IMG/VR virus record: IMGVR_UViG_3300042868_007959
Span: 62,001-126,000 of that record
DNA length: 64,000 nucleotides
Reading direction: 5' to 3' (one strand)
The notes under the pieces are model-generated. The model saw only the letters and a list, made by a program, of their open reading frames with translations, ran no database searches and had not been told where the DNA came from. Both the position numbers and the translations under genes were made by a program. Below, piece by piece: positions 5,668-47,734 of this stretch; position 1 is the first letter of the stretch, and each line of letters begins with the position of its first letter.

Positions 5668-6318
5668 TTAATATTCCAAACTTTTAGGTAAAAATAATAG
5701 GGTTGGGTTCTTCTTTTGAATATCTAAGTTTGGGTATTCCTCTTTAAATTTCATCACGTCAAACTTCTTAGTGATTAAATGGTACCCATTTTTAGTTGGG
5801 ATAATAGCTTCAATCTTTGGACCAACTTCATGTCCAATTGGTATTCCTACCTCGTCAAATTTAACTTTGGTAATTGGATTACATTTATATTCAATAAATG
5901 CCATCATTACTGGACTAGGTATATGACTATCATCGATATCTATAATCCACCTCTTCTCGTGAGTTTTAATTTGACCAACAACTGAGTCAAATAAACCTTG
6001 TTGTTTATCTACACCATCTCTAATACGTTCTGCCAGTATCGCCAACATATTAAGGGAAACATCCTTATGGTTTTGTTTCTGAACATGAATATATGCCCTC
6101 GCCTTAAACATTTCACAAAGTTGTTTAATCTCGTCATACCTCTTTTCAAGATGATCAATAGATTCTATACAGTAAGTTTTAATTGTTCTTACTGACTGAT
6201 GATTATCTCTTTCCCCTTCAGGTTGATCCTTTTTACGTTTAAAAACATATAACATATAAAAATCACCTTTATCAGTGAAATGTAATAGTGGTTTTATTAA
6301 TTCTAAGTTATCTATCAT
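5668..6318 (-). CDS. Conserved phage protein with AEP/primpol-like motifs
   Basis: WIIDIDD (hhhDhD) and TKNGYHL (sxH) resemble AEP motifs I and II. Confidence 0.6.
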   Translation of the reverse strand: MIDNLELIKPLLHFTDKGDFYMLYVFKRKKDQPEGERDNHQSVRTIKTYCIESIDHLEKRYDEIKQLCEMFKARAYIHVQKQNHKDVSLNMLAILAERIRDGVDKQQGLFDSVVGQIKTHEKRWIIDIDDSHIPSPVMMAFIEYKCNPITKVKFDEVGIPIGHEVGPKIEAIIPTKNGYHLITKKFDVMKFKEEYPNLDIQKKNPTLLFLPKSLEY

Positions 6319-7370
6319 AGTTTCCTAAATTTTGGTTTTAAAGCACTCCATATAATTTTATCATAATCTTTACCATCCCACATCGCAAACATAATTGCCT
6401 TTGCAATTGGATGGTGATTCTTAATATGTTCCGCAAATTCTTTCTTAGTTGGTTCTACTTCTATATCACCGTATTTACCAAATCTAAAATAATCATAAGT
6501 TTTACCTAGTTGGTTATAGTATTGGTACCAATGATACCCCAAACTACTGGCGTAAGTTTTAATCTTACCATAAAATTCATCAGGAACATCTTTAAGAAAA
6601 TCTTCTATTTTACCACCACTAGATAAAATTTCCCATACAGTTGTAGTTGATACATTTGTCATTATTTTATGTAATCTGAGATATTCTTCACCCTTTATCT
6701 TCATTCTGTCACCATTAGAAAATTTAACTACATAACCCTCTTCATCATCTTTTATTATATTTTTTAAGGTAGTAAAATCAGTTATGCCATCATATTTTTT
6801 AACTACTCTGAATCCTATATTTTGAATTAAATTTTTTAATCTTAAATCTACATCTTCACTATGTAAGACAACTTCATTTTCGGTTTTAGTATTTATCATA
6901 CCTAATAACACTAAATCCTCAAAATCATACTGTACCACTATTCGATTATCATCGTATATGATTTCAAATAAATAAGTATAATCTTTATGTAACTTATCGT
7001 AATCATATTTTTGTAATAAATCAAAACCCTTTATAGATTGTTCAGAAGTGAATGAACCTCTAGTTGCCAATACCCATTGATCACCATAATGAAATAGAAT
7101 TCCTAATGAACCATCCATTTTATCATAAACGTCAAATTCAGATGTGGTAGTATGTTTACCTTCTTCCATATTAAAGAATTTTTTAAATGGTCTACCAACA
7201 ATATCACCATCGGAATTTGTTACTAATCCCCTACACATCAGAGTTATATTATCCCATAATGATTCGTATTGTACTTTTTCACTATAATTCCAAATAGTTA
7301 GATCCAAAGTAGGGTGAACTTGTTTATGTAATAAACCCTTATCAAAATATTCATTTAAAATTTCATTCAT
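6315..7370 (-). CDS. T4 Rnl1-type RNA ligase
   Basis: CRGLV, PFKKFFN, motif I KMDGSLG, LFEII, EGYVV, KIKGEEY. Confidence 0.92.
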   Translation of the reverse strand: MNEILNEYFDKGLLHKQVHPTLDLTIWNYSEKVQYESLWDNITLMCRGLVTNSDGDIVGRPFKKFFNMEEGKHTTTSEFDVYDKMDGSLGILFHYGDQWVLATRGSFTSEQSIKGFDLLQKYDYDKLHKDYTYLFEIIYDDNRIVVQYDFEDLVLLGMINTKTENEVVLHSEDVDLRLKNLIQNIGFRVVKKYDGITDFTTLKNIIKDDEEGYVVKFSNGDRMKIKGEEYLRLHKIMTNVSTTTVWEILSSGGKIEDFLKDVPDEFYGKIKTYASSLGYHWYQYYNQLGKTYDYFRFGKYGDIEVEPTKKEFAEHIKNHHPIAKAIMFAMWDGKDYDKIIWSALKPKFRKL

Positions 7371-7444: not shown

Positions 7445-8959
7445 TTAAACATTTTCTAAAACCTTAGTCAATCTTTCTCTAATTTGAGTAAGGGTTGTTT
7501 GGTTATAAAATACACCATCTTCATAGATTGCTTTTAAATCACCAGTATTTTCACCCGACCAAGTTTGTTGATCAACTAATTTATACCCACCTTCACCTGT
7601 TGTTACTCTAAGTAATCCAGTTGCAGATTTTTTGGTACCATCGTCAGTGATTGGATCTTTGAATATTTCACGACCCTCAATTGAGAATGATGGACTTCCT
7701 GACTCCGCCATATGTTTAACTTCAACATAGGTTGCTTTCATTGCGAATCCAAATGTATCACGTGTGTTGTATTGGTAAGTGAATGAACCGATACCCAAAA
7801 CAACATTTGTTGATGCAAATCCTTTTGCTTCTAATCTAGCGCAAATTTCATTTGCTCTATCGATTGTAATTGAGTCGCCATAGATTGCTCCGATATGTGG
7901 ATCAAGTACTTTATAACCTTGTTCGTTTATTGTTCCACCGAATACATCCCAAAGCAATTCAATAACACCTTTAAGTTCAGGCATTAATTCGGTTCCTTTT
8001 TCATTACCTAATTTAATTCCACAAATAATATCAACTGGATCACCAGAGTCAGGACGAATAACCAATTTACCATCACGACTCATAATTTCTTCTTTCAAAG
8101 TAACTACGTGTTCAGTACATACTTTCCACAAGTCCCATGTATCGGATACTACTGAAAGGATTCCAGTTGGGTATGTTTCTAATAATCTACGGAATGTTTC
8201 TATTTCATCTTCTTTACCACCAGCACACATTACTGAATGTTCTGTCGCATTTACTGAACCACCAACAAAACCTTCTTCACCGTAATATTTACGAGCCCCA
8301 TAAATTGCTGGAAGTGAATCTGTTCCTGAGAATGATGTTAGATGTCCAATACCTGATGAAATAGTTGCATCGATTGAGTCTAATCCTCTCATTGAGAAGT
8401 CGTGTCCTTGCCAATCAACAAACCAAGCTCTTTCAGTATCGGTTTTTTCTTGCCAAGATGTTAATACCTTTCTGTAGTTATGTGCAATGGTTGCTGAAGT
8501 CATTGGTTTCCAAAGTAAGTTAGAGATAATCGTCTCCAAATAATTAGTTACCCAATAAAAATCAGGATGTGTATTGTAGATTGTTAACACAGGAATCTTT
8601 TCCCCAATTACAGAACCCTCCTCAATTGACTTTACCTTAATAGGTAAGTATTGTAAATCCCAAAGAGCTTCAAAATGTGATACATCATAATCTGTGTTAA
8701 GATACATAGATAATTCTTTTTTCATTTCTCCACAAACATGTTCTTTTGGTTGGTGGAAGAAATCTTTCTCGAATGATTCATGAATTATTTTCATAACCAT
8801 TTGTTGACCAAAAGACACTATCTCTTTACAGTGTTTTGGTGCGTGTTTCAAACTTCTAGGTGTGAAATTTGAATAGACTAATGTTGTACCCTTTGGATAC
8901 TGCTGATGATGTCCTGTTTTGTAACCATCTGTTAAAAGTAACGGATTGATGTTTCTCAT
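7445..8959 (-). CDS. nadV: Nicotinamide phosphoribosyltransferase-like (NAMPT/Namat)
   Basis: LLTDGYKTGH, HDFSMRG, NATEHSVM, SVVSDTWD, IRPDSGDP, IYGDSIT, GIGS, KKSATG. Confidence 0.95.
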   Translation of the reverse strand: MRNINPLLLTDGYKTGHHQQYPKGTTLVYSNFTPRSLKHAPKHCKEIVSFGQQMVMKIIHESFEKDFFHQPKEHVCGEMKKELSMYLNTDYDVSHFEALWDLQYLPIKVKSIEEGSVIGEKIPVLTIYNTHPDFYWVTNYLETIISNLLWKPMTSATIAHNYRKVLTSWQEKTDTERAWFVDWQGHDFSMRGLDSIDATISSGIGHLTSFSGTDSLPAIYGARKYYGEEGFVGGSVNATEHSVMCAGGKEDEIETFRRLLETYPTGILSVVSDTWDLWKVCTEHVVTLKEEIMSRDGKLVIRPDSGDPVDIICGIKLGNEKGTELMPELKGVIELLWDVFGGTINEQGYKVLDPHIGAIYGDSITIDRANEICARLEAKGFASTNVVLGIGSFTYQYNTRDTFGFAMKATYVEVKHMAESGSPSFSIEGREIFKDPITDDGTKKSATGLLRVTTGEGGYKLVDQQTWSGENTGDLKAIYEDGVFYNQTTLTQIRERLTKVLENV

Positions 8960-13717: not shown

Positions 13718-13878
13718 AATTAGCGGAGATTTCATCCCATCCATTGATCACCCAAGGACTCGTTTCTAATGTATTTGGCACTCCGCCATTGTAAGTTTTC
13801 TGTTGCTTACGCCCTCATTCGTGGACTTCCGACATCCCAATGAGTTTTACCGTCCTATCGGAGTCAGGTAACCGCTTG

Positions 13879-13970
13879 TAGTCAGGACAGGACTCGAACC
13901 TGTATGTACAGTTATACAGAACTGCACATCCCTGTATGGATATTTGCGTCTACCATTTCGCCACCTGACT
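13879..13970 (-). ncRNA. tRNA-scaffold element F (non-canonical anticodon arm)
   Basis: AGTCAGG/CCTGACT acceptor, Leu-type D arm, ACAGG-TTCGAGT-CCTGT T arm; 42-nt insert with two hairpins. Confidence 0.8.
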
Positions 13971-15685: not shown

Positions 15686-15703
15686 CAATATGTCAATGAA
15701 CTT
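15686..15703 (-). promoter_or_regulatory. boxA-like antitermination element
   Basis: AAGTTCATTGACATATTG directly after the promoter, before tRNA cluster 1. Confidence 0.65.
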
Positions 15704-16401: not shown

Positions 16402-16518
16402 TAGTCAGAACAGGATTCGAACCTGTGTTTACACTTTACTTGTATTAGTTGTGTCCGATAGATTGGGTATCAATACATTTCCCGCACCACCTGCTCTTAA
16501 CCACTGAGCTACCTGACT
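16402..16518 (-). ncRNA. tRNA-scaffold element C
   Basis: AGTCAGG/TCTGACT acceptor, class-I D arm GCTCAGTGGTTAAGAGC, ~66-nt insert, ACAGG-TTCGAAT-CCTGT. Confidence 0.8.
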
Positions 16519-16612: not shown

Positions 16613-16737
16613 TAGTCAGGACAGGATTCGAACCTGTATGATAACTTATGAGCAGTCTTAACGGGTCTTTCGAGGTTACTCGCGTTATCTTTACTATTAA
16701 CCTTTATTCATGCGTCTACCAATTCCGCCACCTGACT
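16613..16737 (-). ncRNA. tRNA-scaffold element B
   Basis: AGTCAGG/CCTGACT, GCGGAATTGGTAGACGC, 74-nt insert with GATAAC/GTTATC stem, canonical T arm. Confidence 0.82.
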
Positions 16738-26155: not shown

Positions 26156-26536
26156 TTATTTGAATTTACCAACTGGACATTCATCAATAAGTTGTTTTAG
26201 TTTGTCTTTTAACTTGTTGAACTCTTTTCTACCTTTTATCAATGTTTTACACTTTGGATAAAATCGTATTGTGTCTTCAAATTTTTCAGTTTCAATTTCA
26301 AAATCAAAAATAATATTTTCAATATTCTTATAATACCCAATATCAATATCAAACCAAGGAAAGTTTTCACCCCAATTTTTATGTCCCCAACAAGATTGTG
26401 TTGTCCCAATGTTGTTATAATTCAATAAAACAATTAATTCTCTAATACCCTCATCAATACCACAACCCAATCCATCGGTAATTATTTTTGATTTCTCATC
26501 TATTTTTTTATATCTATCATTCATAGGATAAAACAA
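26156..26536 (-). CDS. Hypothetical protein
   Basis: IDEGI...LN...TTQSCWGH motif. Confidence 0.72.
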   Translation of the reverse strand: MFYPMNDRYKKIDEKSKIITDGLGCGIDEGIRELIVLLNYNNIGTTQSCWGHKNWGENFPWFDIDIGYYKNIENIIFDFEIETEKFEDTIRFYPKCKTLIKGRKEFNKLKDKLKQLIDECPVGKFK

Positions 26537-26551
26537 ATTAATAACTAAAAA

Positions 26552-26603
26552 TATAACAAATGATAAACAACATTAAAACGATTGTTTATCATCGGACGTT
26601 ATA
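26552..26603. repeat. attC-like inverted-repeat element 1
   Basis: TATAAC-AA-ATGATAAACAA...TTGTTTATCAT-CGGAC-GTTATA; identical to 28580-28631. Confidence 0.7.
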
Positions 26604-26628
26604 ACCAATACTACGAAAGTGTTCCAAA

Positions 26629-26826
26629 TTAAGTTTTTTCAAGTAATGAATTATCCAATTCTATATCTAAACCAAATAGTGATTTTTCAATTACTTCACG
26701 TATTGTTAATGTTGGTTCATCTTTCATAATATTTAAACAAACTAACATTAACTCATTTGTTCTATCAGTTTGATTGGTGAATTTAATCACATAATCAATA
26801 AATTTTAAATCATCAAAATGTTTCAT
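26629..26826 (-). CDS. Hypothetical protein
   Basis: ORF track. Confidence 0.6.
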   Translation of the reverse strand: MKHFDDLKFIDYVIKFTNQTDRTNELMLVCLNIMKDEPTLTIREVIEKSLFGLDIELDNSLLEKT

Positions 26827-30056: not shown

Positions 30057-30202
30057 AAATGATAATCAGGATTAGATTATATACGTGCTCTACCAACTGA
30101 GCTACCGCCGCCCCGAAGGACAACGGACAGGATTCGAACCTGCGACACCGAGCTTAAAAGGCTAATGTAATTGTTGCTGAAACAATCCTTTTATTATCAT
30201 TT
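30057..30202 (-). ncRNA. Y-RNA-like (YrlA-like) RNA with circularly permuted tRNA-Lys module
   Basis: Terminal stem AAATGATAAT/ATTATCATTT; order: CT-TTT-AA hairpin, T arm, acceptor CCGTTGTCC-TTCG-GGGCGGCGG, D arm GCTCAGTTGGTAGAGC. Confidence 0.78.
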
Positions 30203-30298: not shown

Positions 30299-30315
30299 CA
30301 ATACGTCAAAGAACT
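30299..30315 (-). promoter_or_regulatory. boxA-like element
   Basis: AGTTCTTTGACGTATTG between the terminator and first tRNA. Confidence 0.7.
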
Positions 30316-31415: not shown

Positions 31416-31419
31416 GTAT

Positions 31420-31498
31420 AAATGTTCAGGAAGACTTTTTGTTTTCAAATTTCCGATCTTGATTTTTTTATTTTGCTGAAATCTTCCTTTTAACATTT
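31420..31498 (-). ncRNA. Minimal Y-RNA-like stem (no tRNA module)
   Basis: AAATGTT-AAAAGGAAGA-TTTCAGCAA...GTCTTCC-TG-AACATTT; same architecture as the 30057-30202 terminal stem. Confidence 0.65.
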
Positions 31499-31499
31499 G

Positions 31500-31582
31500 T
31501 GAGGGTAGTAGGATTCGAACCTACTCAGTCATAGACAACAGATTTACAGTCTGCCCCAACTCTCCAACTTTGGCGTACCCCC
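31500..31582 (-). tRNA. tRNA-Tyr(GTA)
   Basis: GCAGA-CT GTA AA-TCTGT; long variable arm. Confidence 0.95.
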
Positions 31583-32315: not shown

Positions 32316-32333
32316 CAATATGTCAAAGAACTT
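32316..32333 (-). promoter_or_regulatory. boxA-like element
   Basis: AAGTTCTTTGACATATTG. Confidence 0.7.
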
Positions 32334-37623: not shown

Positions 37624-37794
37624 AATCTTTTTATCTATAAAGTAAAATTAATAAAAAAATCCGAATCTGCCAAATTTTTTTATATAAATATTTGTTAAAA
37701 ATAAAAAAGTCCCGAATTAACGGGACTTTAAAGGGCCGATAGGATCACTATCAACTTCCACCACTTCGTTTTTAAGGAACAAAGAAACCTAATG

Positions 37795-38192
37795 TGGAGA
37801 TGGAGGGAGTCGAACCCTCGTCCAATCAAATTGCCATTAAAAATTCATTCACAAGCTTAGTTCATTTTTCTTAATGAACAAAATATTTGGTTTTATTTAT
37901 AACATGGTTACCAACAACCCTGTTTCGATAATTGTTTAGAGAGTTTTACCGTCAACTCTATTTTTTACACCTTTCTGTTTCTAGGTAAGTGTGACCCACC
38001 GATTAAACTAATTCCATTAATTCAATCTCTTCAACCACCGCTGAGCGAGTGATAGAAGTTGGGATACTCATCATATCCTCTGTGTTGTATGCGTTTGCAT
38101 TTATATTTTGATAGGTGTTTAAGGGTTTCCATCTAACCCTGCTTGCATCATTTCAAACTCAACCTTTGACTGTCAAATCCAAAACCATCCCC
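37795..38192 (-). ncRNA. ssrA: tmRNA
   Basis: 5' GGGGATGGTTTTGGATTTGAC; 3' GAGGGTTCGACTCCCTCCATCTCCA; G3:U70; resume context ATAAAT-GCA; tag ORF 38003-38098; no encoded CCA. Confidence 0.93.
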
Positions 38193-38194
38193 AG

Positions 38195-38208
38195 TTTTCA
38201 AAGAACTT
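38195..38208 (-). promoter_or_regulatory. boxA-like element
   Basis: AAGTTCTTTGAAAA, 2 nt upstream of tmRNA. Confidence 0.6.
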
Positions 38209-42811: not shown

Positions 42812-43807
42812 TCAAATTTTTAATGATTTTATTTTTTCTTTTTCTTCTTTATCTATATTTGAAGGTATGTCAACCCATATTTCTAATAACATATCCCCTG
42901 TCATATTATCCCTTACAAACCCTTTATTAGGAACTCTTAACATTGTACCTACTTTAGTACCTGAAGATATTTTAAATCTTATTTTTTTATCCATAGTATC
43001 TACCTCAATAGAATCATTACCTAATACTAAATCCTTATAGGAAAGATTTACTTTCTGGTATATGTCTAATCCCACCCTTTTAAATTTTTCATGTAGAATT
43101 TGTACTACATTAATTAATAAGTCACCTTCTAAACCATTCCTAATTGCGTTACCCATATTATAAACTCTCAATGTTTCACCATCCATAATTCCTTTAGGTG
43201 TATCAAATTCAAATGTCTTATCTTCTTTAATTACACCATTACCTACACAGGTACCACATTTTTTTGTAATTATATTCCCTTCACCATTACACTTAGGACA
43301 GTGAACAGTACTCTGCATTTTACCAAATGGGGTATTCTGAACTTGATTAACCATACCAATCCCATTACAAGTGTCACAACTAATACTATCACCACCAGTC
43401 CCACCACAAGGTGTACATTTTACAAATTTTTTATATATAATTTTTTTATTCGACCCATTATATATTTCTTCTAAAGTGAGTTTAAGATTTATCCTTATGT
43501 CCCCGCCTTTGGATCTCCTATTCTTAATACTACCGTAAAAAGAGGATAATATGTCTTCCATATTATCACCAGCAAATGGATTAGTCCTACCATCTGCAGT
43601 ACCAAACCTATCATAATTTAATTTTTTTTCTTTATCGGACAATACCGAATACGCTTCCGCAATAGATTTAAATTTTTCTTCTGACTCTTTATTATCTGGA
43701 TTTAGATCTGGATGATGTTCTTTAGATAGTTTCCTATACGCCTTTTTTATTTCAGTTTCATCGGCATTTTTACCCACACCTAAAATATTATAATAATCTT
43801 TACTCAT
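42812..43807 (-). CDS. dnaJ: DnaJ chaperone
   Basis: [11 protein letters not shown], four CxxCxGxG repeats, C-terminal domain. Confidence 0.96.
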
Positions 43808-43861
43808 TCTTTATATTTATTTTTTATAAATTATAAGTATTTTTAATTAAAAAATAAAGGT

Positions 43862-44512
43862 ATGGTGTATAGAATTATTATTACCCAGAATGGTAAGAAA
43901 AGAAAAATACTTTATGAGGGGAGAAATGAGAATACTGCAAAGGAAAAATACTTTTCCTCAAAAGATGAAAATATAGTTTTATTACCTAAAAAAAACAATA
44001 CATATAAGAAAATTAAACCAGTGAGTTTTGAAATTCTTTTATTGAAAGAAAAGGAATGGAATGATGTGGATTACTTTGATAGGGATGACTTAGGTAGAAC
44101 TATACCTGTAACATTAAATAGTGATAAATGGAACTTAATACATAAATCAGAATATTTTTATGAGGAGAAATTTAGTGTGTTTGGTTATAAAGAAAGGATG
44201 GACACTAAAAAAATATTAAAACTTTTTTTACTTAATAGAACTAAAGAAGATAAAATTAAACAAGTTAATTACATTAACAATAAATTATTAATATATCAGA
44301 ATTATGATTTTGATATAATTATCTGTAAAAATTCTTATGATACTAAAAGACTATACAATGTCCTTATTGAATTTTGTGAAACGAATAATGTGGATAACAT
44401 TTTATTTACGGGATCAGTAAATAAAAAAAATAGGACTAAAACTTATAAAAGAATTGTAGAAAAAACTGGGTGGACAATTAATAAAACTTATAGATCATCC
44501 ACCCGTCCTTAA
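43862..44512 (+). CDS. Hypothetical protein
   Basis: ORF track; convergent with 44513-44986. Confidence 0.75.
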   Translation: MVYRIIITQNGKKRKILYEGRNENTAKEKYFSSKDENIVLLPKKNNTYKKIKPVSFEILLLKEKEWNDVDYFDRDDLGRTIPVTLNSDKWNLIHKSEYFYEEKFSVFGYKERMDTKKILKLFLLNRTKEDKIKQVNYINNKLLIYQNYDFDIIICKNSYDTKRLYNVLIEFCETNNVDNILFTGSVNKKNRTKTYKRIVEKTGWTINKTYRSSTRP

Positions 44513-44986
44513 TTATTCTACTCCCACTTGAAATTTATTTGATATATCCTCAATTAAATCATTAAGTCTATCAAACTCACTCTCATCTTTAATGTGGACA
44601 GGGTTAATACACTTAATTTCTTCCTTATCATCGGTAGGTAAAAAGAATAGTCTAACTTCATCCCCTTTATTTTCCAAATAGGTTCTCACACTCTCACCAT
44701 AAGTTTCTATCATCTCCCTATTGGCAAATAAATCTCTCTGTAAGTAAAAAACTAAAATTAAAGGTGTGTAACTACTATTTTGTGTTTTAAATTTCTCTAA
44801 CGTAACGTATTCGATATCCTTAGTCGATACATCATATGTTTCACTTAACATATTTTCTTTTTGAGTTCTATCTTCTTCACCAACCGCATCTTTACATTCG
44901 ATAGGATTTCCGTTATCATCATTTACATAAATTAAATAATGTCTAATCCCTTTTTCTAATCTGTTATTTTTAGTAACAATTTTCAT
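44513..44986 (-). CDS. Hypothetical protein
   Basis: ORF track. Confidence 0.75.
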   Translation of the reverse strand: MKIVTKNNRLEKGIRHYLIYVNDDNGNPIECKDAVGEEDRTQKENMLSETYDVSTKDIEYVTLEKFKTQNSSYTPLILVFYLQRDLFANREMIETYGESVRTYLENKGDEVRLFFLPTDDKEEIKCINPVHIKDESEFDRLNDLIEDISNKFQVGVE

Positions 44987-45060
44987 AAATTATATTTTGT
45001 CAATTTTATTATTTTAAATAATTTTAATAAAAATATTTTAAACTGTAAATGTTATAAAAT

Positions 45061-45092
45061 AAAAAAGGGAAAGTATTTCTACTCTCCCTTTT
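45061..45092 (-). terminator. Intrinsic terminator
   Basis: AAAAGGGAGAGT-AGAAAT-ACTTTCCCTTTTTT. Confidence 0.75.
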
Positions 45093-45097
45093 AAATT

Positions 45098-45590
45098 TTG
45101 GTGTCGGAATGGTGATCCTTCTTTTATTTTCGGTGGTAGAGTACCCACCCTAAGTATTTTAATCCGTTCTAGTTCGGATGTCTTATTATTTAGTTGAGAC
45201 AAAACCAACTACTATTTTTTACTTGTAGTAAACAAGAGGTATGTTTTACGACCTAAAGTGTAGGGGTTTCCTACGTTTAAACTCTCCTATGGTCGCCACT
45301 TTATATTTTTTTTCGAGTAAAGTGGTAAAACTCTGATCTATCTGCTTTTTTTCTAGTAAGTGTTTGCAGAAACCATTCGTTTATCGGACTTAAAGGGAAT
45401 TCGTATATTCCCAATCCATTACACCTAATAACATTGTGGTATCGGAATTGTCTGACACTTTACATAACTCTGAGTGGTCCCCCGCTTTCACGGTTTACAC
45501 CCTTATGGTTATATGGGTTATCAAAGCCCCTCTTTCTTAGCTGAATTGTAGTTTTTTAATTTTGCTGCAATTATTCCTTAGCTACCACAA
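45098..45590 (-). ncRNA. Unidentified ~490-nt multi-hairpin RNA region
   Basis: No ORF; more than 10 hairpins; long-range TTGTGGTA/TACCACAA pairing; bounded by boxA and a terminator; 5' part carries the AAGGA..TT.CAGCAA Y-like motif. Confidence 0.6.
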
Positions 45591-45607
45591 ATATTTTCAA
45601 AGAACTT
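45590..45607 (-). promoter_or_regulatory. boxA-like element
   Basis: AAGTTCTTTGAAAATATT immediately after the DUF2828 stop codon. Confidence 0.6.
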
Positions 45608-45608
45608 A

Positions 45609-47024
45609 TTATACAGTTATTACACTATATCTTTTATCATTAACAGTATCCATCATTATGGATTCTGGTGTCATATTTTTACCCCCTAATAGAGACTTTA
45701 GTATTGATGGACTAAATCCCGAAACTAATGCAGTTCCGTTTTTATCAAACTCAACTGGAAAGTTACCACCACTAGAATTTAAATTCCAATATACTACATT
45801 AGGCATTTTATATCCTGCCTCTTTATACATTTCCTCAATCATCGATTGTGCACCCAAACTATTTCTTCTAGTTGCCTGATTGAATTGCATATCAGATAAA
45901 ATTAATATCTTAGTCGGCATAAATTCCTCACTAATATTATTGTTTTTTGCCTGAGTTAGAATTAAGTTAAATACTTTTTCTAAATTAGTACTCATACCCC
46001 AATCTGAACTTATTAATTGTGATAGTCTTTGTTCTAAACTACCTTTTAAATACTGTAATTCAGGACTTTCGGAAAATGTAATAAATGCATCTTTGAAGTT
46101 ACCTTCACTTCTTTCAGAAATATACATACCTAATGATACTGCAATATCCATACAAGTTAGGTTTGGGTTACCTCCCGCTGGACATTCCATAGACCCTGAA
46201 ACGTCAACAACTGGTAAAATTCTTTCTTCAGATCCCTCCATCCAATTAGGTAGTGACTCCCACTGTTTACTATTTACTACTTCATCACCACCCATCTTCA
46301 TAGATTTTATAATGTCGTATGGGTAAACCGCACCTGCATTAACTTTTGCAGTTCCTTCAATTAGAGAATTTTTATACTCCTCATATCTTTCAATATCATT
46401 TCTTTTAAATGATTTTTGGTATCTTGATGATGCCAATGAAGGAATTTTTGAGTAGTCGATTGATTCCCAATCTTTTGAACACATCTTAGTTTCTACAACA
46501 TTAGTTAAATCAACTAACATTTTTCTATATTGTTTAGGAGTAGTTTTAAATAATCTTCTAAGTTTATTTGCCACTTCACCTTTTCTAGGCATCCATTTTG
46601 CACAAAGTCCATCACCGTTAGTTAATGCGGTTTTGATAATTTCAAACATTTCATCCTCTAATTCGGTACCCATAAGGACTAATATATCATCCCATCTACC
46701 AAACTCTGAAATAAAATTTATATTTTTTCTAAGTGTTATAGGTGAGTTGACAGATAGATACTCAATAACGTCTCTAAATACTTTTCTTTCACCCGCACCA
46801 CTTCTAATATCTCTAACCCAAAAAAGTATTTTTGTTGCCACTAAAGGATTTTCTAAAAAGGCTTGATTAAAAAGTTTATTAACCAATTCTTTAGATTTTC
46901 CTCTCATCGCCCCAATAGCGAAAAATAAATCCACACACTTATTAAGTGTCGTAGGATTGGTAACCATACCATTATCGGTTAATGTTACATTTTGTTCTTC
47001 CGTATTAGTTAACTGAGTGTCCAT
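45609..47024 (-). CDS. DUF2828-family protein (helical N-terminus + vWA; TROVE/Ro60-like architecture)
   Basis: RDIRSGAGER, GRWDD, AKWMPR, NAGAVYPYDI, VDVSGSM MIDAS, ILSDMQFN, YWNL, VSGFSP. Confidence 0.85.
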   Translation of the reverse strand: MDTQLTNTEEQNVTLTDNGMVTNPTTLNKCVDLFFAIGAMRGKSKELVNKLFNQAFLENPLVATKILFWVRDIRSGAGERKVFRDVIEYLSVNSPITLRKNINFISEFGRWDDILVLMGTELEDEMFEIIKTALTNGDGLCAKWMPRKGEVANKLRRLFKTTPKQYRKMLVDLTNVVETKMCSKDWESIDYSKIPSLASSRYQKSFKRNDIERYEEYKNSLIEGTAKVNAGAVYPYDIIKSMKMGGDEVVNSKQWESLPNWMEGSEERILPVVDVSGSMECPAGGNPNLTCMDIAVSLGMYISERSEGNFKDAFITFSESPELQYLKGSLEQRLSQLISSDWGMSTNLEKVFNLILTQAKNNNISEEFMPTKILILSDMQFNQATRRNSLGAQSMIEEMYKEAGYKMPNVVYWNLNSSGGNFPVEFDKNGTALVSGFSPSILKSLLGGKNMTPESIMMDTVNDKRYSVITV

Positions 47025-47107
47025 AATCTTTTTTTATCGTTTGTGAATGTAAATATATATACTATTTTTTAAAAAGTCAAATATTTTTTTAAAAAAATTT
47101 AAATTTT

Positions 47108-47734
47108 TTAATTGTCGAACCAAAAAACTATTCTAATATCCTTAGGATCACCTAATTCCAAAAGAGTGTCTACAACTGTCCTAAAAAAATAAGTTCCTAT
47201 CCCTATCTGATCTAATTCATTATCTGTCATATTATAATAATGACTTTCTATAATTTCATCTAAGTATAAAAAATTATGTGAATGTCCATCCATATCCCAT
47301 TGATCACTTAAGTTACAAATTTCTTCAGATACATCATCAGGTAAACCTCTATCCATATCAGCTATCAAATCCATAGAACTATCTCTAACACCTGCTAACG
47401 CACCAAACAAACTATAATTTCTACCATTATACGGTTGATCGGTTCTGGGATCAGATAATTTACCGTATACATGTATTTCTTTTGAGTCATCAGAAAATAA
47501 ATCTACTAAAAATTTATTAAAAACAAATTCTTCTATTTTATTAGAAGGTTGACCACCTTTAAAATATTTTTTTATCATACGATTAGATTCTTCCTTAGTC
47601 AAACCTAAATTATGTTCCATATACTCTTCAGCTTTCTCTAAACTGTAGTCATAGAAAAATTCATTACCGACCTTTTCCCATTTATTAGTTTTAGTATTTC
47701 TTTTTTCTGCAAACATATGTACATCACAACCCAT
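47108..47734 (-). CDS. Conserved phage hypothetical protein
   Basis: MGCDVH...RNYSLFGALAGVR...RGLPDD...HSHNFL...RIVFWFDN. Confidence 0.8.
   Translation of the reverse strand: MGCDVHMFAEKRNTKTNKWEKVGNEFFYDYSLEKAEEYMEHNLGLTKEESNRMIKKYFKGGQPSNKIEEFVFNKFLVDLFSDDSKEIHVYGKLSDPRTDQPYNGRNYSLFGALAGVRDSSMDLIADMDRGLPDDVSEEICNLSDQWDMDGHSHNFLYLDEIIESHYYNMTDNELDQIGIGTYFFRTVVDTLLELGDPKDIRIVFWFDN

What the first reader, a model, noticed from the sequence alone, without database searches (positions are those of the whole stretch)
45098..45590. ~490-nt ornate non-coding region after the Ro-like gene
It is bounded by boxA and a terminator, with no ORF. It contains TTGTGGTA/TACCACAA (45583-90/45434-41) closing a 157-nt domain that includes the Y-like motif and a CCGT-GAAA-GCGG tetraloop. 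A possible crossing helix links 45451-58 with 45101-08. At least nine further hairpins are visible (GGGAAT/ATTCCC, TCTGC/GCAGA, CCACTTTA/TAAAGTGG, GTAGG/CCTAC, AGGT/ACCT, ACTAC/GTAGT, GTCT/AGAC, ATCCG/CGGAT, GGTGG/CCACC). It is a candidate new large phage ncRNA, or an array of small RNAs.
Basis: partly seen in the sequence, partly recalled or inferred. Interest (0 to 1): 0.65.

Follow-up and report, generated by a model that had tools for sequence, protein, structure and literature searches.

The report
Giant Y-like RNA beside phage Ro
A conserved, transcribed, highly structured non-coding RNA of about 500 nt lies just downstream of a Ro60-like gene in aquatic jumbo phages; it is most likely an oversized two-module relative of the small Y RNAs that partner Ro proteins, and no RNA family library holds it.

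Summary
The region is real and is not chance. Window 45608-45061 (minus strand) has no conserved ORF. It starts behind a boxA-like 9-mer and ends at an intrinsic terminator. It lies directly 3' of a gene whose product folds like Ro60 (TROVE ring plus vWA).

About 70 distinct homologues were found in viral and metagenomic contigs. Wherever flank was available (29 of 33 viral loci tested), the RNA follows that gene. Covariation supports about 15 helices in two domains. In 85 curated pairs, 95% of cells form standard pairs and 40 pairs show compensatory changes; 0 of 500 shuffles reach this.

Metatranscriptome contigs from 24 runs in 18 studies hold part of it. In three of the four runs laid on the window, contigs cover the RNA and almost nothing of the flanking genes.

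Rfam has no match. Domain 1 opens with a stem, then a 5-nt spacer, then CAGCAA. The same signature marks small hairpin RNAs beside DUF2828 genes in 14 of 16 diverse phage loci (p = 2e-25). It also flanks a YrlA-like tRNA mimic elsewhere in this window.

Best reading: a giant, duplicated Y-RNA-like scaffold for the phage Ro-like protein. Binding has not been tested.

The parts
45609..47024 (-). Ro60-like gene (471 aa; Pfam DUF2828 + DUF7788; PHROG 850 'RNA-binding protein'). The RNA follows its stop codon directly.
   Evidence: AF2 model pLDDT 82. The top 11 Foldseek PDB hits are all Ro60 structures over the full length, E 4e-8 to 1e-4.
45597..45605 (-). boxA-like 9-mer GTTCTTTGA, 6 nt before helix P1.
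   Evidence: Exact in about 43-45 of 49 homologues. The window holds 4 exact copies, all on the minus strand and all 5-21 nt upstream of an ncRNA gene: tRNA-Ser, tRNA-Asn, tmRNA and this RNA. Its function is inferred.
45061..45608 (-). The whole non-coding RNA unit, from the stop codon to the end of the terminator U-tract.
   Evidence: Alignments A1-A3; RNA contigs; no conserved ORF.
45434..45590 (-). Domain 1 (157 nt). Closed by P1 (45590-83/45441-34) and inner helix GGAAU/AUUCC (45577-73/45448-44). Contains helices 45512-08/45468-64, 45502-498/45476-72 and the tetraloop hairpin 45493-90/45485-82.
   Evidence: 98.4% paired; 13 of 22 pairs with compensatory change; 0 of 500 shuffles reach this.
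45562..45567 (-). CAGCAA motif, 5 nt after the inner helix of domain 1. Candidate contact site for the Ro-like protein.
   Evidence: CAGCAA in 45 of 49 sequences and CGGCAA in 4. The same stem-spacer-CAGCAA signature is enriched beside DUF2828 genes in other phages.
45515..45529 (-). Hairpin GGG/CCC. Its loop (45524-19) may pair with 45457-52, which would make a candidate pseudoknot.
   Evidence: The hairpin is 91% standard pairs, with G-C to A-U and U-A changes. The loop helix is 72% standard pairs with compensatory changes, but the alignment is weak there.
45100..45425 (-). Domain 2 (about 325 nt). Closed by GGUGU/ACACC (45425-21/45104-00) and GAAUGGU/ACCAUUC (45378-72/45113-07).
   Evidence: The closing pair 45424-45101 is GC in 33 sequences and AU in 16, with 3 changes on the tree and 100% standard pairs. 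The inner helix never varies.
45364..45382 (-). Core 19-mer holding CGAA and CUGCAA (AAACGAAUGGUUUCUGCAA). It is paralogous to the domain 1 segment GGAAU..CAGCAA.
   Evidence: Its invariance is partly by construction, because most loci were found with this exact 19-mer.
45386..45417 (-). Variable two-tier hairpin (45417-13/45390-86 and 45412-07/45400-395). Absent from 29 of 49 homologues.
   Evidence: 100% and 90% standard pairs, with 3 and 5 covarying pairs.
45243..45331 (-). Three-way junction. Invariant helix GUUUUA/UAAAAC (45331-26/45248-43) encloses hairpin 45325-18/45303-296 and the stacked helices 45295-91/45253-49, 45284-81/45259-56 and 45274-70/45264-60.
   Evidence: The three stacked helices are 98-100% standard pairs with 2-4 covarying pairs each. 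The enclosing helix never varies, so it is untested.
45237..45240 (-). ACCU, a candidate pseudoknot partner of AGG(U/A) at 45288-45285.
   Evidence: 92% standard pairs; A-U changes to G-C in 2 sequences. Weak.
45132..45200 (-). Three terminal hairpins: 45200-197/45183-180, 45179-75/45166-62 and 45149-45/45136-32.
   Evidence: One search covers the first two. Per-sequence folds show a hairpin at the third site in most variants, with different stem sequences.
45063..45092 (-). Intrinsic terminator (13-bp stem plus U-tract).
   Evidence: It covaries at 8 of 8 pairs. RNA contigs from four runs end at 45092-45103.
45021..45049 (-). Sigma-70-like promoter (TTTACA-17-TAAAAT) for the next gene. It marks the end of the RNA unit.
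   Evidence: Conserved in the close relatives.
30067..30192 (-). Separate YrlA-like RNA in the tRNA array. Stem AGGAUUG-UUU-CAGCAA encloses a T-arm, a closed acceptor stem and a D-arm.
   Evidence: Rfam YrlA matches the tRNA-like core 30084-30150 at 33 bits, E 6e-6, below the gathering score of 69.
31417..31501 (-). Separate minimal two-tier stem + CAGCAA module between tRNA-Tyr and tRNA-Trp.
   Evidence: Weak match to the domain 1 covariance model, E 0.26.

Best explanation
The region encodes a structured non-coding RNA of about 490-530 nt. It is made together with, or just behind, the phage's Ro60-like gene and ends at an intrinsic terminator. It consists of two paralogous modules. Each module is closed by a two-tier stem that is followed by a CNGCAA motif: GGAAU-AAUUG-CAGCAA in domain 1 and CGAAUGG-UUU-CUGCAA in domain 2.

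I propose that these stem-plus-motif units are docking sites for the Ro-like protein, as the terminal stem with GNCGAA is for Ro60 on Y and YrlA RNAs. On this reading the RNA is an oversized, duplicated Y-RNA-like scaffold. The ornate inserts stand where YrlA carries its tRNA-like domain. They would gate the protein's RNA-binding surfaces or tether another factor, such as a host exoribonuclease or a defence protein, during infection. The boxA-like element would keep RNA polymerase from terminating across this long untranslated stretch.

Shown: the RNA exists, is conserved, covaries and is transcribed; it is linked to the gene; the protein has the Ro60 fold; the motif signature recurs.

Inferred: binding, stoichiometry, the tethered partner, the boxA function, and the biological role.
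For: 1. Linkage. 29 of the 33 viral loci tested with an RNA match, 27 of them carrying the RNA at full length, have the DUF2828 homologue (55-83% aa identity) directly 5' on the same strand. In the other four the locus ends before the gene. The two genome-collection hits are the same.
2. Conservation exceeds that of the gene in some lineages: RNA 75-79% nt identity against 61-62% for the gene.
3. Structure. 85 curated pairs are 95% standard pairs, with 40 pairs and 314 cells showing compensatory change. Shuffles give 27.8 +/- 2.2 pairs and 93.8 +/- 8.9 cells (0 of 500 reach the observed values). Slid partners give 41-50% paired. For domain 1 by covariance model, 96 cells against 20.8 +/- 3.4.
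4. Transcription. 24 metatranscriptome runs in 18 studies hold part of it. Contigs in runs X1-X3 lie on 45002-45698 and miss the neighbouring genes, apart from one 151-nt piece in X3. X2 has one 577-nt contig covering 45092-45661.
5. The protein is Ro60-like: the top 11 Foldseek hits are all Ro60.
6. Signature. In 16 diverse DUF2828 loci (Mycobacterium, Staphylococcus, Listeria, Enterococcus, Campylobacter, Felix-O1-like, T4-like, uncultured), 44 of 71 forward-strand CAGCAA have a stem of at least 7 bp ending 2-3 nt upstream. The figure is 9.6% for permuted motifs and 6 of 39 on the reverse strand; Fisher p = 2e-25.
7. In this window the same stem-CAGCAA flanks a tRNA-like core that matches Rfam YrlA. 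That is the position where YrlA carries its Ro60-binding stem with GNCGAA (PMC4201824).
8. The domain 1 model gives weak matches exactly on those small modules.
9. A relative with 53% aa identity (L007) has a single module of about 125 nt (AGAAUGU-AUA-CUGCAA...ACAUUCU) plus a terminator at the same place.
10. Published work. Thermus phage Ro60 binds Y-like RNAs encoded beside its gene and forms complexes with host PNPase (PMC12135203). The Listeria phage CKA15 homologue is packaged in virions and lies next to hugely abundant ncRNAs (PMC12282133). Bas63 gp130, which is Ro60-like and lies upstream of tRNAs, counters the Ppl defence (PMC11482910).
Against: - No binding data exist for any DUF2828 protein with any CAGCAA RNA.
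- The RNA has no tRNA-like domain and no Rfam Y_RNA or YrlA match.
- Its size is 4-5 times that of any known Y RNA.
- The domain 1 model does not detect domain 2, so the duplication rests on the similarity of short segments.
- Matches of the model to small modules have E 0.03-3, weak one by one.
- The inner closing helices and the motifs hardly vary, so pairing there is untested.
- Contigs cannot show RNA ends, strand or abundance.
- KVP40 and some other homologue-bearing loci show no module in the flanks examined.
- Most homologues were found with an exact 19-mer, which narrows the diversity sampled.
Confidence: 0.65

Rival explanations
1. An array rather than one RNA. The primary transcript is cut into two or more stable small RNAs: domain 1 (about 160 nt) and domain 2 (about 325 nt). 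Each would be a separate Y-like RNA, as M. smegmatis YrlA and YrlB are cut from one precursor.
For: Each domain is closed by its own terminal helices, with only 8-12 nt between them. The two domains are paralogous at their 5' strands. Relatives have a single module or arrays of separate modules. M. smegmatis YrlA and YrlB come from one precursor (PMC4201824).
Against: RNA contigs run across the junction at 45434-45425 in X1 (335 nt), X2 (577 nt) and X4. However, contigs can merge overlapping species and cannot show ends.
Confidence: 0.3
2. A cis-acting 3' UTR. The structure stabilises the Ro-like mRNA, or lets the protein regulate its own mRNA, and has no role in trans.
For: It is always on the same strand directly after the stop codon, with no strong promoter of its own. 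In X4 one contig spans gene and RNA.
Against: In three of four RNA runs the RNA region is assembled without the coding region, apart from 53-90 nt of the gene's 3' end. About 500 nt with some 15 covarying helices, evolving more slowly than the gene, is far more than a stabiliser needs. Separate modules with the same signature lie far from the gene, in the tRNA array.
Confidence: 0.1
3. A large structured RNA whose function is unrelated to the Ro-like protein, for example a self-assembling or tRNA-linked RNA in the manner of ROOL or GOLLD, or an RNA decoy against a host defence. On this reading the adjacency reflects only a shared RNA-metabolism gene neighbourhood.
For: From my own knowledge, other large phage RNAs (ROOL, GOLLD) sit near tRNA genes and have no known protein partner. 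The window is rich in RNA-related genes: about 29 tRNAs, a tmRNA and an Rnl1-like ligase. No binding data exist.
Against: Linkage to the gene is strict across gene divergence down to 55% aa identity. The stem-CAGCAA signature is shared with small RNAs beside DUF2828 genes in unrelated phages. There is no Rfam match in the region to any family, ROOL and GOLLD included if Rfam 15 holds them.
Confidence: 0.12
4. Not an RNA gene at all: small ORFs, or DNA-level signals such as a replication origin or packaging site.
For: The window has ORFs of 56, 37 and 33 aa in the region. Both strands fold better than shuffles.
Against: No ORF is conserved in place or length, and several homologues have none of 31 aa or more. 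The compensatory changes include G-U pairs that work only on the minus strand. The region is found in RNA libraries. The terminator and gene orientation fit the minus strand.
Confidence: 0.02

Closest known systems
Bacterial and phage YrlA / Y RNA-like RNAs (Rfam RF02553; Chen et al. 2014, PMC4201824; Thermus phage phiLo Yrl1/Yrl2, PMC12135203)
   Same: Encoded right beside a Ro60-fold gene on the same strand. Terminal stem formed by the 5' and 3' ends, with a short conserved motif next to the 5' strand (GNCGAA there; CNGCAA, and in domain 2 also CGAA, here). A large structured interior. More than one such RNA per genome.
   Different: 480-530 nt against 80-130 nt. Two modules in tandem. No T-arm or D-arm in this RNA. 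No cmscan match. The partner protein belongs to the DUF2828 branch, not the Pfam TROVE branch. The motif differs.
Metazoan and Deinococcus Y RNAs with Ro60/Rsr (RYPER complex with PNPase)
   Same: The proposed logic is the same: the RNA docks on a Ro ring through a stem and uses the rest of its body to gate the protein or tether a partner.
   Different: No sequence or model similarity. The bulged-helix motif GGUCCGA is absent. The partner, and any nuclease link, are untested here.
Large ornate bacterial and phage ncRNAs (ROOL, GOLLD, OLE, raiA)
   Same: Size class (about 0.5 kb). Many covarying helices and candidate pseudoknots. Phage-borne, in a tRNA-rich neighbourhood. Abundant in RNA libraries.
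   Different: No Rfam match to any family in the region. Strict linkage to one protein gene. Modular, duplicated Y-like design.
boxA antitermination sites of rRNA operons and lambdoid nut sites
   Same: The 9-mer GTTCTTTGA (followed by AAA) resembles boxA sequences as I recall them (E. coli GCTCTTTAACAA; Firmicute spacer GTTCTTTGAAAACT). It sits just upstream of untranslated structured RNAs.
   Different: No boxB or boxC was examined. NusB/NusE binding is untested. The host is unknown. It could instead be a processing signal.

Membership tests
YrlA / bacterial Y RNA-like (RF02553) | Scores at or above the Rfam gathering threshold (69 bits) | tested here: not met
   No YrlA match in 44950-45650 even at E <= 10 or window-wide at gathering. 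A different RNA at 30084-30150 reaches 33 bits.
YrlA / bacterial Y RNA-like (RF02553) | Encoded adjacent to a Ro60 orthologue | tested here: met
   It lies directly 3' of a protein with the Ro60 fold. 29 of 33 viral loci tested show the same arrangement; the other four are cut off before the gene.
YrlA / bacterial Y RNA-like (RF02553) | tRNA-like domain (T-arm, D-arm, acceptor-like stem) | tested here: not met
   No tRNA or tRNA-like match by Rfam or ARAGORN in the region. No T-loop sequence in the covarying hairpins.
YrlA / bacterial Y RNA-like (RF02553) | GNCGAAN0-1G motif near the 5' end, at the Ro-binding stem (PMC4201824) | tested here: inconclusive
   Domain 2 has ACGAAUG at the start of its inner closing helix, with A in place of the first G. 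Domain 1 has GGAAU, which is CGAAU in 4 relatives. The recurrent motif is CNGCAA instead.
YrlA / bacterial Y RNA-like (RF02553) | Length 80-130 nt | tested here: not met
   About 490 nt between P1 and the domain 2 closing helix in the window; the whole units of the homologues are 483-603 nt.
Ro60-Y RNA ribonucleoprotein (functional class) | The RNA is bound by the Ro protein | not testable with these tools
   Needs EMSA or co-purification. Only linkage and motif recurrence are available.
Ro60 / TROVE + vWA protein (the neighbouring gene) | HEAT-repeat ring followed by a vWA domain | tested here: met
   The AF2 model has an all-helical N-terminal part (29-256) and an alpha/beta C-terminal part (269-447). 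The top 11 PDB matches are Ro60 over 490-530 columns, TM 0.4-0.58. phmmer matches the phiLo TROVE protein weakly, E 0.0024.
ROOL / GOLLD / OLE / raiA and other curated large ncRNAs | Match to the Rfam covariance model | tested here: not met
   cmscan of all 4227 Rfam 15 families gives nothing in the region at gathering or at E <= 10, apart from terminator-like noise.
boxA antitermination element | Conserved boxA-like sequence just upstream of untranslated RNA genes | tested here: met
   The 9-mer is exact in about 43-45 of 49 homologues. All 4 exact copies in the window precede ncRNA genes on the coding strand. Matches with up to one mismatch are not enriched overall: 28 against 26 expected.
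boxA antitermination element | Bound by NusB/NusE and confers antitermination | not testable with these tools
   Needs biochemistry or reporter assays in the (unknown) host.
Intrinsic terminator | G+C-rich stem followed by a U-tract at the 3' end of the unit | tested here: met
   A 13-bp stem plus T-run at 45092-45063. It is present, with covariation, in the homologues.

The most novel reading that the evidence does not exclude
Two linked claims. (1) This is the founding member of a new class of large (about 0.5 kb), two-domain RNP scaffold RNAs of aquatic jumbo phages. It would dock two copies of a Ro-like protein and present ornate domains in place of a tRNA mimic. (2) 'Two-tier stem + 2-5 nt + CNGCAA' is the general recognition code of the DUF2828 branch of Ro proteins in phages of Actinobacteria, Firmicutes, Campylobacterota, Proteobacteria and probably cyanobacteria. 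If so, many unannotated gaps in phage tRNA regions would be Y-like RNA genes.
Probability: 0.45. Interest if true: 0.85.

Novelty: new variant of a known kind. Interest (0 to 1): 0.8.

Why it matters
Ro60 and Y RNA systems are central to RNA quality control and to autoimmunity research. In bacteria and phages their roles are only beginning to be seen: attenuation of PNPase by a Thermus phage Ro60, and a Ro-like gene that counters the Ppl defence.

The DUF2828 branch of Ro-like proteins is present in at least 711 sequenced phage records, and no RNA partner has been described for it. This finding gives that branch a concrete and testable set of partner RNAs. It offers a short recognition signature that can be used to annotate them. 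It also adds a striking large member, abundant enough to be assembled from lake and ocean metatranscriptomes.

The RNA is a good target for cryo-EM. It would also show how a small RNP scaffold can grow by duplication and insertion into an 'ornate' RNA. The boxA-like elements before the phage's tRNAs, tmRNA and this RNA suggest that phages borrow rRNA-type antitermination for their non-coding genes.

Tried and rejected
- Rfam at gathering and at E <= 10 over the region gave only terminator-like noise.
- blastn of the RNA against 50,697 phage records found no match. No cultured relative carries it, or close records are withheld.
- nhmmer profiles of the family against distant DUF2828 loci (KVP40, S13, wV8, Listeria, Staphylococcus, Mycobacterium, Enterococcus, Campylobacter, L007-L016) gave nothing significant.
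- RNAalifold on the 49-sequence alignment gave a poor structure with a spurious boxA/GGAAU helix. I replaced it with helix-by-helix counts.
- An all-against-all column covariation scan was swamped by G-U and A-U pairs with U-runs.
- A first, lax stem search around CAGCAA had a 44% background. I tightened it.
- The exact 19-mer also hit one unrelated prophage gene (7 loci) and 16 unrelated genomes. These are chance matches.
- The domain 1 covariance model does not find domain 2.
- A promoter reading of GTTCTTTGA was considered and dropped. At two of the four copies, the tRNA-Ser copy and the tmRNA copy, the RNA gene starts too soon for a -10 element.
- The ~490-nt abundant RNA of Listeria phage CKA15 (L193 962-1453) shows no similarity to this RNA and carries no CNGCAA motif.
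- No full-text hit links DUF2828 or CAGCAA to Y RNAs.
Full report
**Setting.** The window is part of a 253,879-bp IMG/VR virus record. It is AT-rich and carries about 29 tRNA genes and a tmRNA, all on the minus strand. It also carries an Rnl1-like RNA ligase, a nicotinamide phosphoribosyltransferase and a DnaJ. The finding lies in a 622-nt gap on the minus strand. The gap separates a 471-aa gene (45609-47024) from a 157-aa gene (44513-44986).

**The upstream protein.** It matches Pfam DUF2828 + DUF7788 and PHROG 850 'RNA-binding protein'. An AlphaFold2 model built on 15 homologues (pLDDT 82, pTM 0.75) has a helical N-terminal part and an alpha/beta C-terminal part. Its 11 best Foldseek matches in the PDB are all Ro60 structures aligned over the full length: Thermus phage phiLo, Deinococcus Rsr, Xenopus and human, E 4e-8 to 1e-4. 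'Ro-like gene' is therefore correct.

**The observation.**
- On the minus strand the gap starts with GTTCTTTGA (45605-45597). It ends with a 13-bp terminator (45092-45063), followed by a sigma-70-like promoter for the next gene (45049-45021).
- The minus strand folds at -134.5 kcal/mol against -109.6 +/- 5.9 for shuffles.
- No ORF is conserved among 49 homologues.

**Homologues.**
- A protein-guided scan of IMG/VR found six syntenic loci (80-83% aa identity) with a gap that is 86% identical at the mean alignment column and already shows compensatory changes.
- The invariant 19-mer AAACGAATGGTTTCTGCAA then recovered 33 viral and 95 metagenomic stretches.
- After removing one unrelated prophage gene, nhmmer gave 101 full-length copies. 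Of these, 71 were unique, and 49 representatives below 97% identity were kept.
- Of the 33 viral loci tested with an RNA match, 29 have the Ro-like gene (55-83% aa identity) immediately upstream on the same strand. In the other four the locus ends before the gene.
- In some lineages the RNA is much better conserved than the gene: 75-79% against 61-62% nt identity.
- Caveat: most loci were found with an exact 19-mer. That segment's invariance is therefore partly by construction, and the true diversity is under-sampled.

**Structure.** I scored hand-defined helices on the 49-sequence alignment A3, counting pair types and changes on a FastTree tree.

*Domain 1* (45590-45434):
- It is closed by P1 (UUGUGGUA/UACCACAA). 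One pair shows GC, AU and UA with 7 changes on the tree.
- Inside P1 is the helix GGAAU/AUUCC.
- It contains helices 45512-08/45468-64 and 45502-498/45476-72 (all 5 pairs covary), and the hairpin 45493-90/45485-82 (all 4 pairs covary).
- A GGG/CCC hairpin (45529-27/45517-15) may pair through its loop with 45457-52, which would form a pseudoknot.

*Domain 2* (45425-45100):
- It is closed by GGUGU/ACACC. One pair is GC in 33 sequences and AU in 16, with 3 independent changes and 100% standard pairs.
- Inside that is the invariant helix GAAUGGU/ACCAUUC.
- It holds a variable two-tier hairpin (45417-45386), absent in 29 of 49 sequences.
- An invariant helix GUUUUA/UAAAAC (45331-26/45248-43) encloses hairpin 45325-18/45303-296 and the stack 45295-91/45253-49, 45284-81/45259-56 and 45274-70/45264-60.
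- It also holds a variable hairpin near 45229-45208 and three terminal hairpins (45200-180, 45179-162, 45149-132). The last forms with different stem sequences in most variants.

*Controls:*
- Over 85 curated pairs, 95.0% of cells are standard pairs, and 40 pairs and 314 cells show changes on both sides.
- 500 shuffles give 27.8 +/- 2.2 pairs and 93.8 +/- 8.9 cells, and none reaches the observed values. Sliding the partners by 1-3 columns gives 41-50% paired and 4-12 pairs.
- A covariance model of domain 1 re-aligned 59 copies. The pair counter then gave 98.4% paired, 13 of 22 pairs with compensatory change, and 96 cells against 20.8 +/- 3.4, with 0 of 500 shuffles as high. That alignment is fitted to the model, which favours it somewhat.

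*Not supported:*
- TCTGC/GCAGA is 33% standard pairs.
- AGGT/ACCT as drawn clashes with a covarying helix.

**Transcription.**
- An index search found 24 metatranscriptome runs in 18 studies (freshwater, lake and two marine) that hold part of the stretch.
- I laid four of them on 43800-47200. In runs X1, X2 and X3 the contigs lie on 45002-45698, apart from one 151-nt piece in the gene in X3. X2 has a single 577-nt contig on 45092-45661. X1 has a 335-nt contig at 99% identity.
- In X4 a 1925-nt contig of a relative spans the Ro-like gene and the RNA and stops at 45096.
- Contigs from all four runs end at 45092-45103, just before the terminator hairpin.
- Uniform DNA carry-over would not single out this segment, so the RNA is stably present in RNA pools. 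Contigs cannot give true ends, strand or level.

**What it is not.** cmscan of all 4227 Rfam 15 families finds nothing here at the gathering score or at E <= 10. blastn finds no cultured phage with it. Full-text searches for DUF2828, and for CAGCAA together with Y RNA, find no description of such an RNA.

**What it resembles.**
- *Modules in other phages.* In more distant DUF2828 loci the gene's flanks hold tRNA-like pieces and short hairpins. Each has its 5' arm followed, after 2-3 nt, by CAGCAA. I fetched loci from cultured phages: Cronobacter S13, KVP40, Felix-O1-like wV8, Listeria LMTA-34 and CKA15, Campylobacter CP30A, Staphylococcus S-CoN_Ph7, Mycobacterium Tourach and Enterococcus A2.
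- *Enrichment test.* Across 16 loci, 44 of 71 forward-strand CAGCAA have a stem of at least 7 bp whose 5' arm ends 2-3 nt upstream and whose 3' arm starts 25-160 nt downstream. The figure is 168 of 1750 for permuted hexamers and 6 of 39 on the reverse strand; Fisher p = 2e-25. Rfam sees only tRNAs in these loci, plus a weak YrlA match on one Tourach module.
- *The window's domains.* Domain 1 has GGAAU-AAUUG-CAGCAA and domain 2 has CGAAUGG-UUU-CUGCAA. In one subgroup the domain 1 strand (GGAAUGGUUUCGGCAAAU) is nearly identical to that of domain 2, so the two closing units are paralogues.
- *Model matches.* The domain 1 model gives weak matches (E 0.03-3) exactly on the small modules of the Staphylococcus phage, wV8, L007, L009, L010, Campylobacter and this window's 31417-31501.
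- *A single-module relative.* L007 (53% aa identity) has one module of about 125 nt with CUGCAA plus a terminator at the same place.
- *A YrlA-like RNA in this window.* The window's tRNA array holds an RNA at 30192-30067 in which AGGAUUG-UUU-CAGCAA and its partner strand enclose a T-arm, a closed acceptor stem and a D-arm. The core matches Rfam YrlA at 33 bits, E 6e-6, below the gathering score.
- *The argument by position.* In YrlA the stem outside the tRNA-like domain, with its GNCGAA motif, is the proposed Ro60 contact (PMC4201824). Here that position is taken by the stem-CAGCAA unit. By the same position and by linkage, I infer that this unit is the docking site of the DUF2828 Ro-like protein.

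**Mechanism proposed.** The RNA is transcribed with or just behind the Ro-like gene. The conserved boxA-like 9-mer also precedes tRNA-Ser, tRNA-Asn and the tmRNA in this window. It may recruit Nus factors to carry the polymerase through about 500 nt of untranslated RNA; this is an inference from the resemblance to boxA, recalled from memory. The RNA folds into two Y-like modules, and each closing unit binds one Ro-like protein or one surface of it. The ornate interiors replace the tRNA mimic of YrlA and would gate the protein or tether a partner.

Published results fit an RNP that acts on host RNA turnover or on defence:
- Thermus phage Ro60 binds two Y-like RNAs encoded beside its gene, can dimerise, and forms complexes that attenuate host PNPase (PMC12135203).
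- The Listeria phage CKA15 homologue is found in virions and lies within 2 kb of the most abundant phage transcripts, which the authors suggested may be Y RNAs (PMC12282133).
- Bas63 gp130, which is Ro60-like and lies directly upstream of tRNA genes, counters the Ppl defence (PMC11482910).

None of these papers describes the CAGCAA signature or a large RNA of this kind.

**Host hints.** A marine short variant lies on an 83.8-kb contig of a Prochlorococcus single-cell assembly. Another lies on a 6.4-kb contig binned with a Flavobacteriales MAG. These are associations only.

**Verdict.** This is a real, conserved, transcribed, covarying large ncRNA family, new to Rfam and to the searchable literature. 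It is best read as a duplicated, enlarged Y-RNA-like partner of a phage Ro-like protein. The existence and structure of the RNA are near certain. Its role as an RNP partner is likely but untested (0.65). Whether it acts as one RNA or as two processed domains is open.

Noticed in passing
window 30067-30192 (-): Unannotated YrlA-like RNA in the tRNA array. A stem followed by CAGCAA encloses a T-arm, a closed acceptor stem with a TTCG loop, and a D-arm. The Rfam YrlA core matches at 33 bits, below the gathering score. Neither ARAGORN nor the Rfam gathering scan calls it.
   Followed up: partly
window 31417-31501 (-): Minimal two-tier stem + CAGCAA hairpin (about 70-85 nt) in the gap between tRNA-Tyr and tRNA-Trp. 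It gives a weak match to the domain 1 covariance model (E 0.26).
   Followed up: partly
window 30306-30314, 32323-32331, 38198-38206 (-): Three further exact copies of the boxA-like GTTCTTTGA, lying 16, 21 and 5 nt upstream of tRNA-Ser, tRNA-Asn and the tmRNA. A one-mismatch copy at 15693-15701 has a similar following sequence (CATATTGG).
   Followed up: partly
L189-L197 and L009-L016 (e.g. L192 1647/1736/1805; L191 3762/3928/4324/4411; L195 4012/4089/4161; L196 3958/4021/4154): Clusters of 2-6 small 'stem, 2-3 nt, CAGCAA' hairpins flank DUF2828 genes in phages of Listeria, E. coli (Felix-O1-like), Staphylococcus, Mycobacterium, Enterococcus, Campylobacter and Cronobacter. Some are annotated as tiny hypothetical ORFs or odd tRNAs.
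   Followed up: yes
L193 962-1453 (Listeria phage CKA15, record 26,236-26,727): An ncRNA region of about 490 nt, reported as the most transcribed part of that phage (7-34% of transcripts, PMC12282133), lies about 1 kb upstream of its DUF2828 gene. It has no Rfam match, no CNGCAA motif and no similarity to the window's RNA. It looks like another unclassified large phage RNA.
   Followed up: partly
L016 4500-5500: About 1.1 kb downstream of a distant DUF2828 gene holds six CAGCAA sites, five with a stem by the strict test and several around circularly permuted tRNA-like pieces (T-arm, closed acceptor stem, D-arm).
   Followed up: partly
window 13878-13970, 16402-16518, 16613-16737 (-): Unusual tRNA-like genes. 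One has a 4-base anticodon call (ARAGORN). Two are Rfam tRNA matches of 117 and 125 nt, which may hold introns or be tRNA-like RNAs.
   Followed up: no
window 37792-38192 (-): Phage-borne one-piece tmRNA (113 bits) with an atypically long predicted tag peptide.
   Followed up: no
window 6315-7370 and 7445-8959 (-): An Rnl1-type RNA ligase (PHROG 562) and a nicotinamide phosphoribosyltransferase. Together with the Ro-like gene, the tRNAs and the tmRNA they form an RNA-repair and NAD-salvage set.
   Followed up: no
L144 4798-5020: One metagenomic contig has a second, partial copy of the 3' half of the RNA about 1.4 kb downstream of the full copy.
   Followed up: no
L198 (Prochlorococcus sp. AG-409-L21 contig, 83.8 kb; same contig as L041) and L211 (Flavobacteriales MAG contig): Of the 18 hits in the 185,579-species genome collection, only these two carry the RNA and the gene. 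The first suggests a phage caught in a Prochlorococcus single cell.
   Followed up: partly
window 45608-45615 (-): TGTATAAT overlaps the stop codon of the Ro-like gene, 2 nt before the boxA-like element. TATA-type sequences are kept at this place in many homologues. It could be a -10 element for an RNA-only transcript.
   Followed up: no
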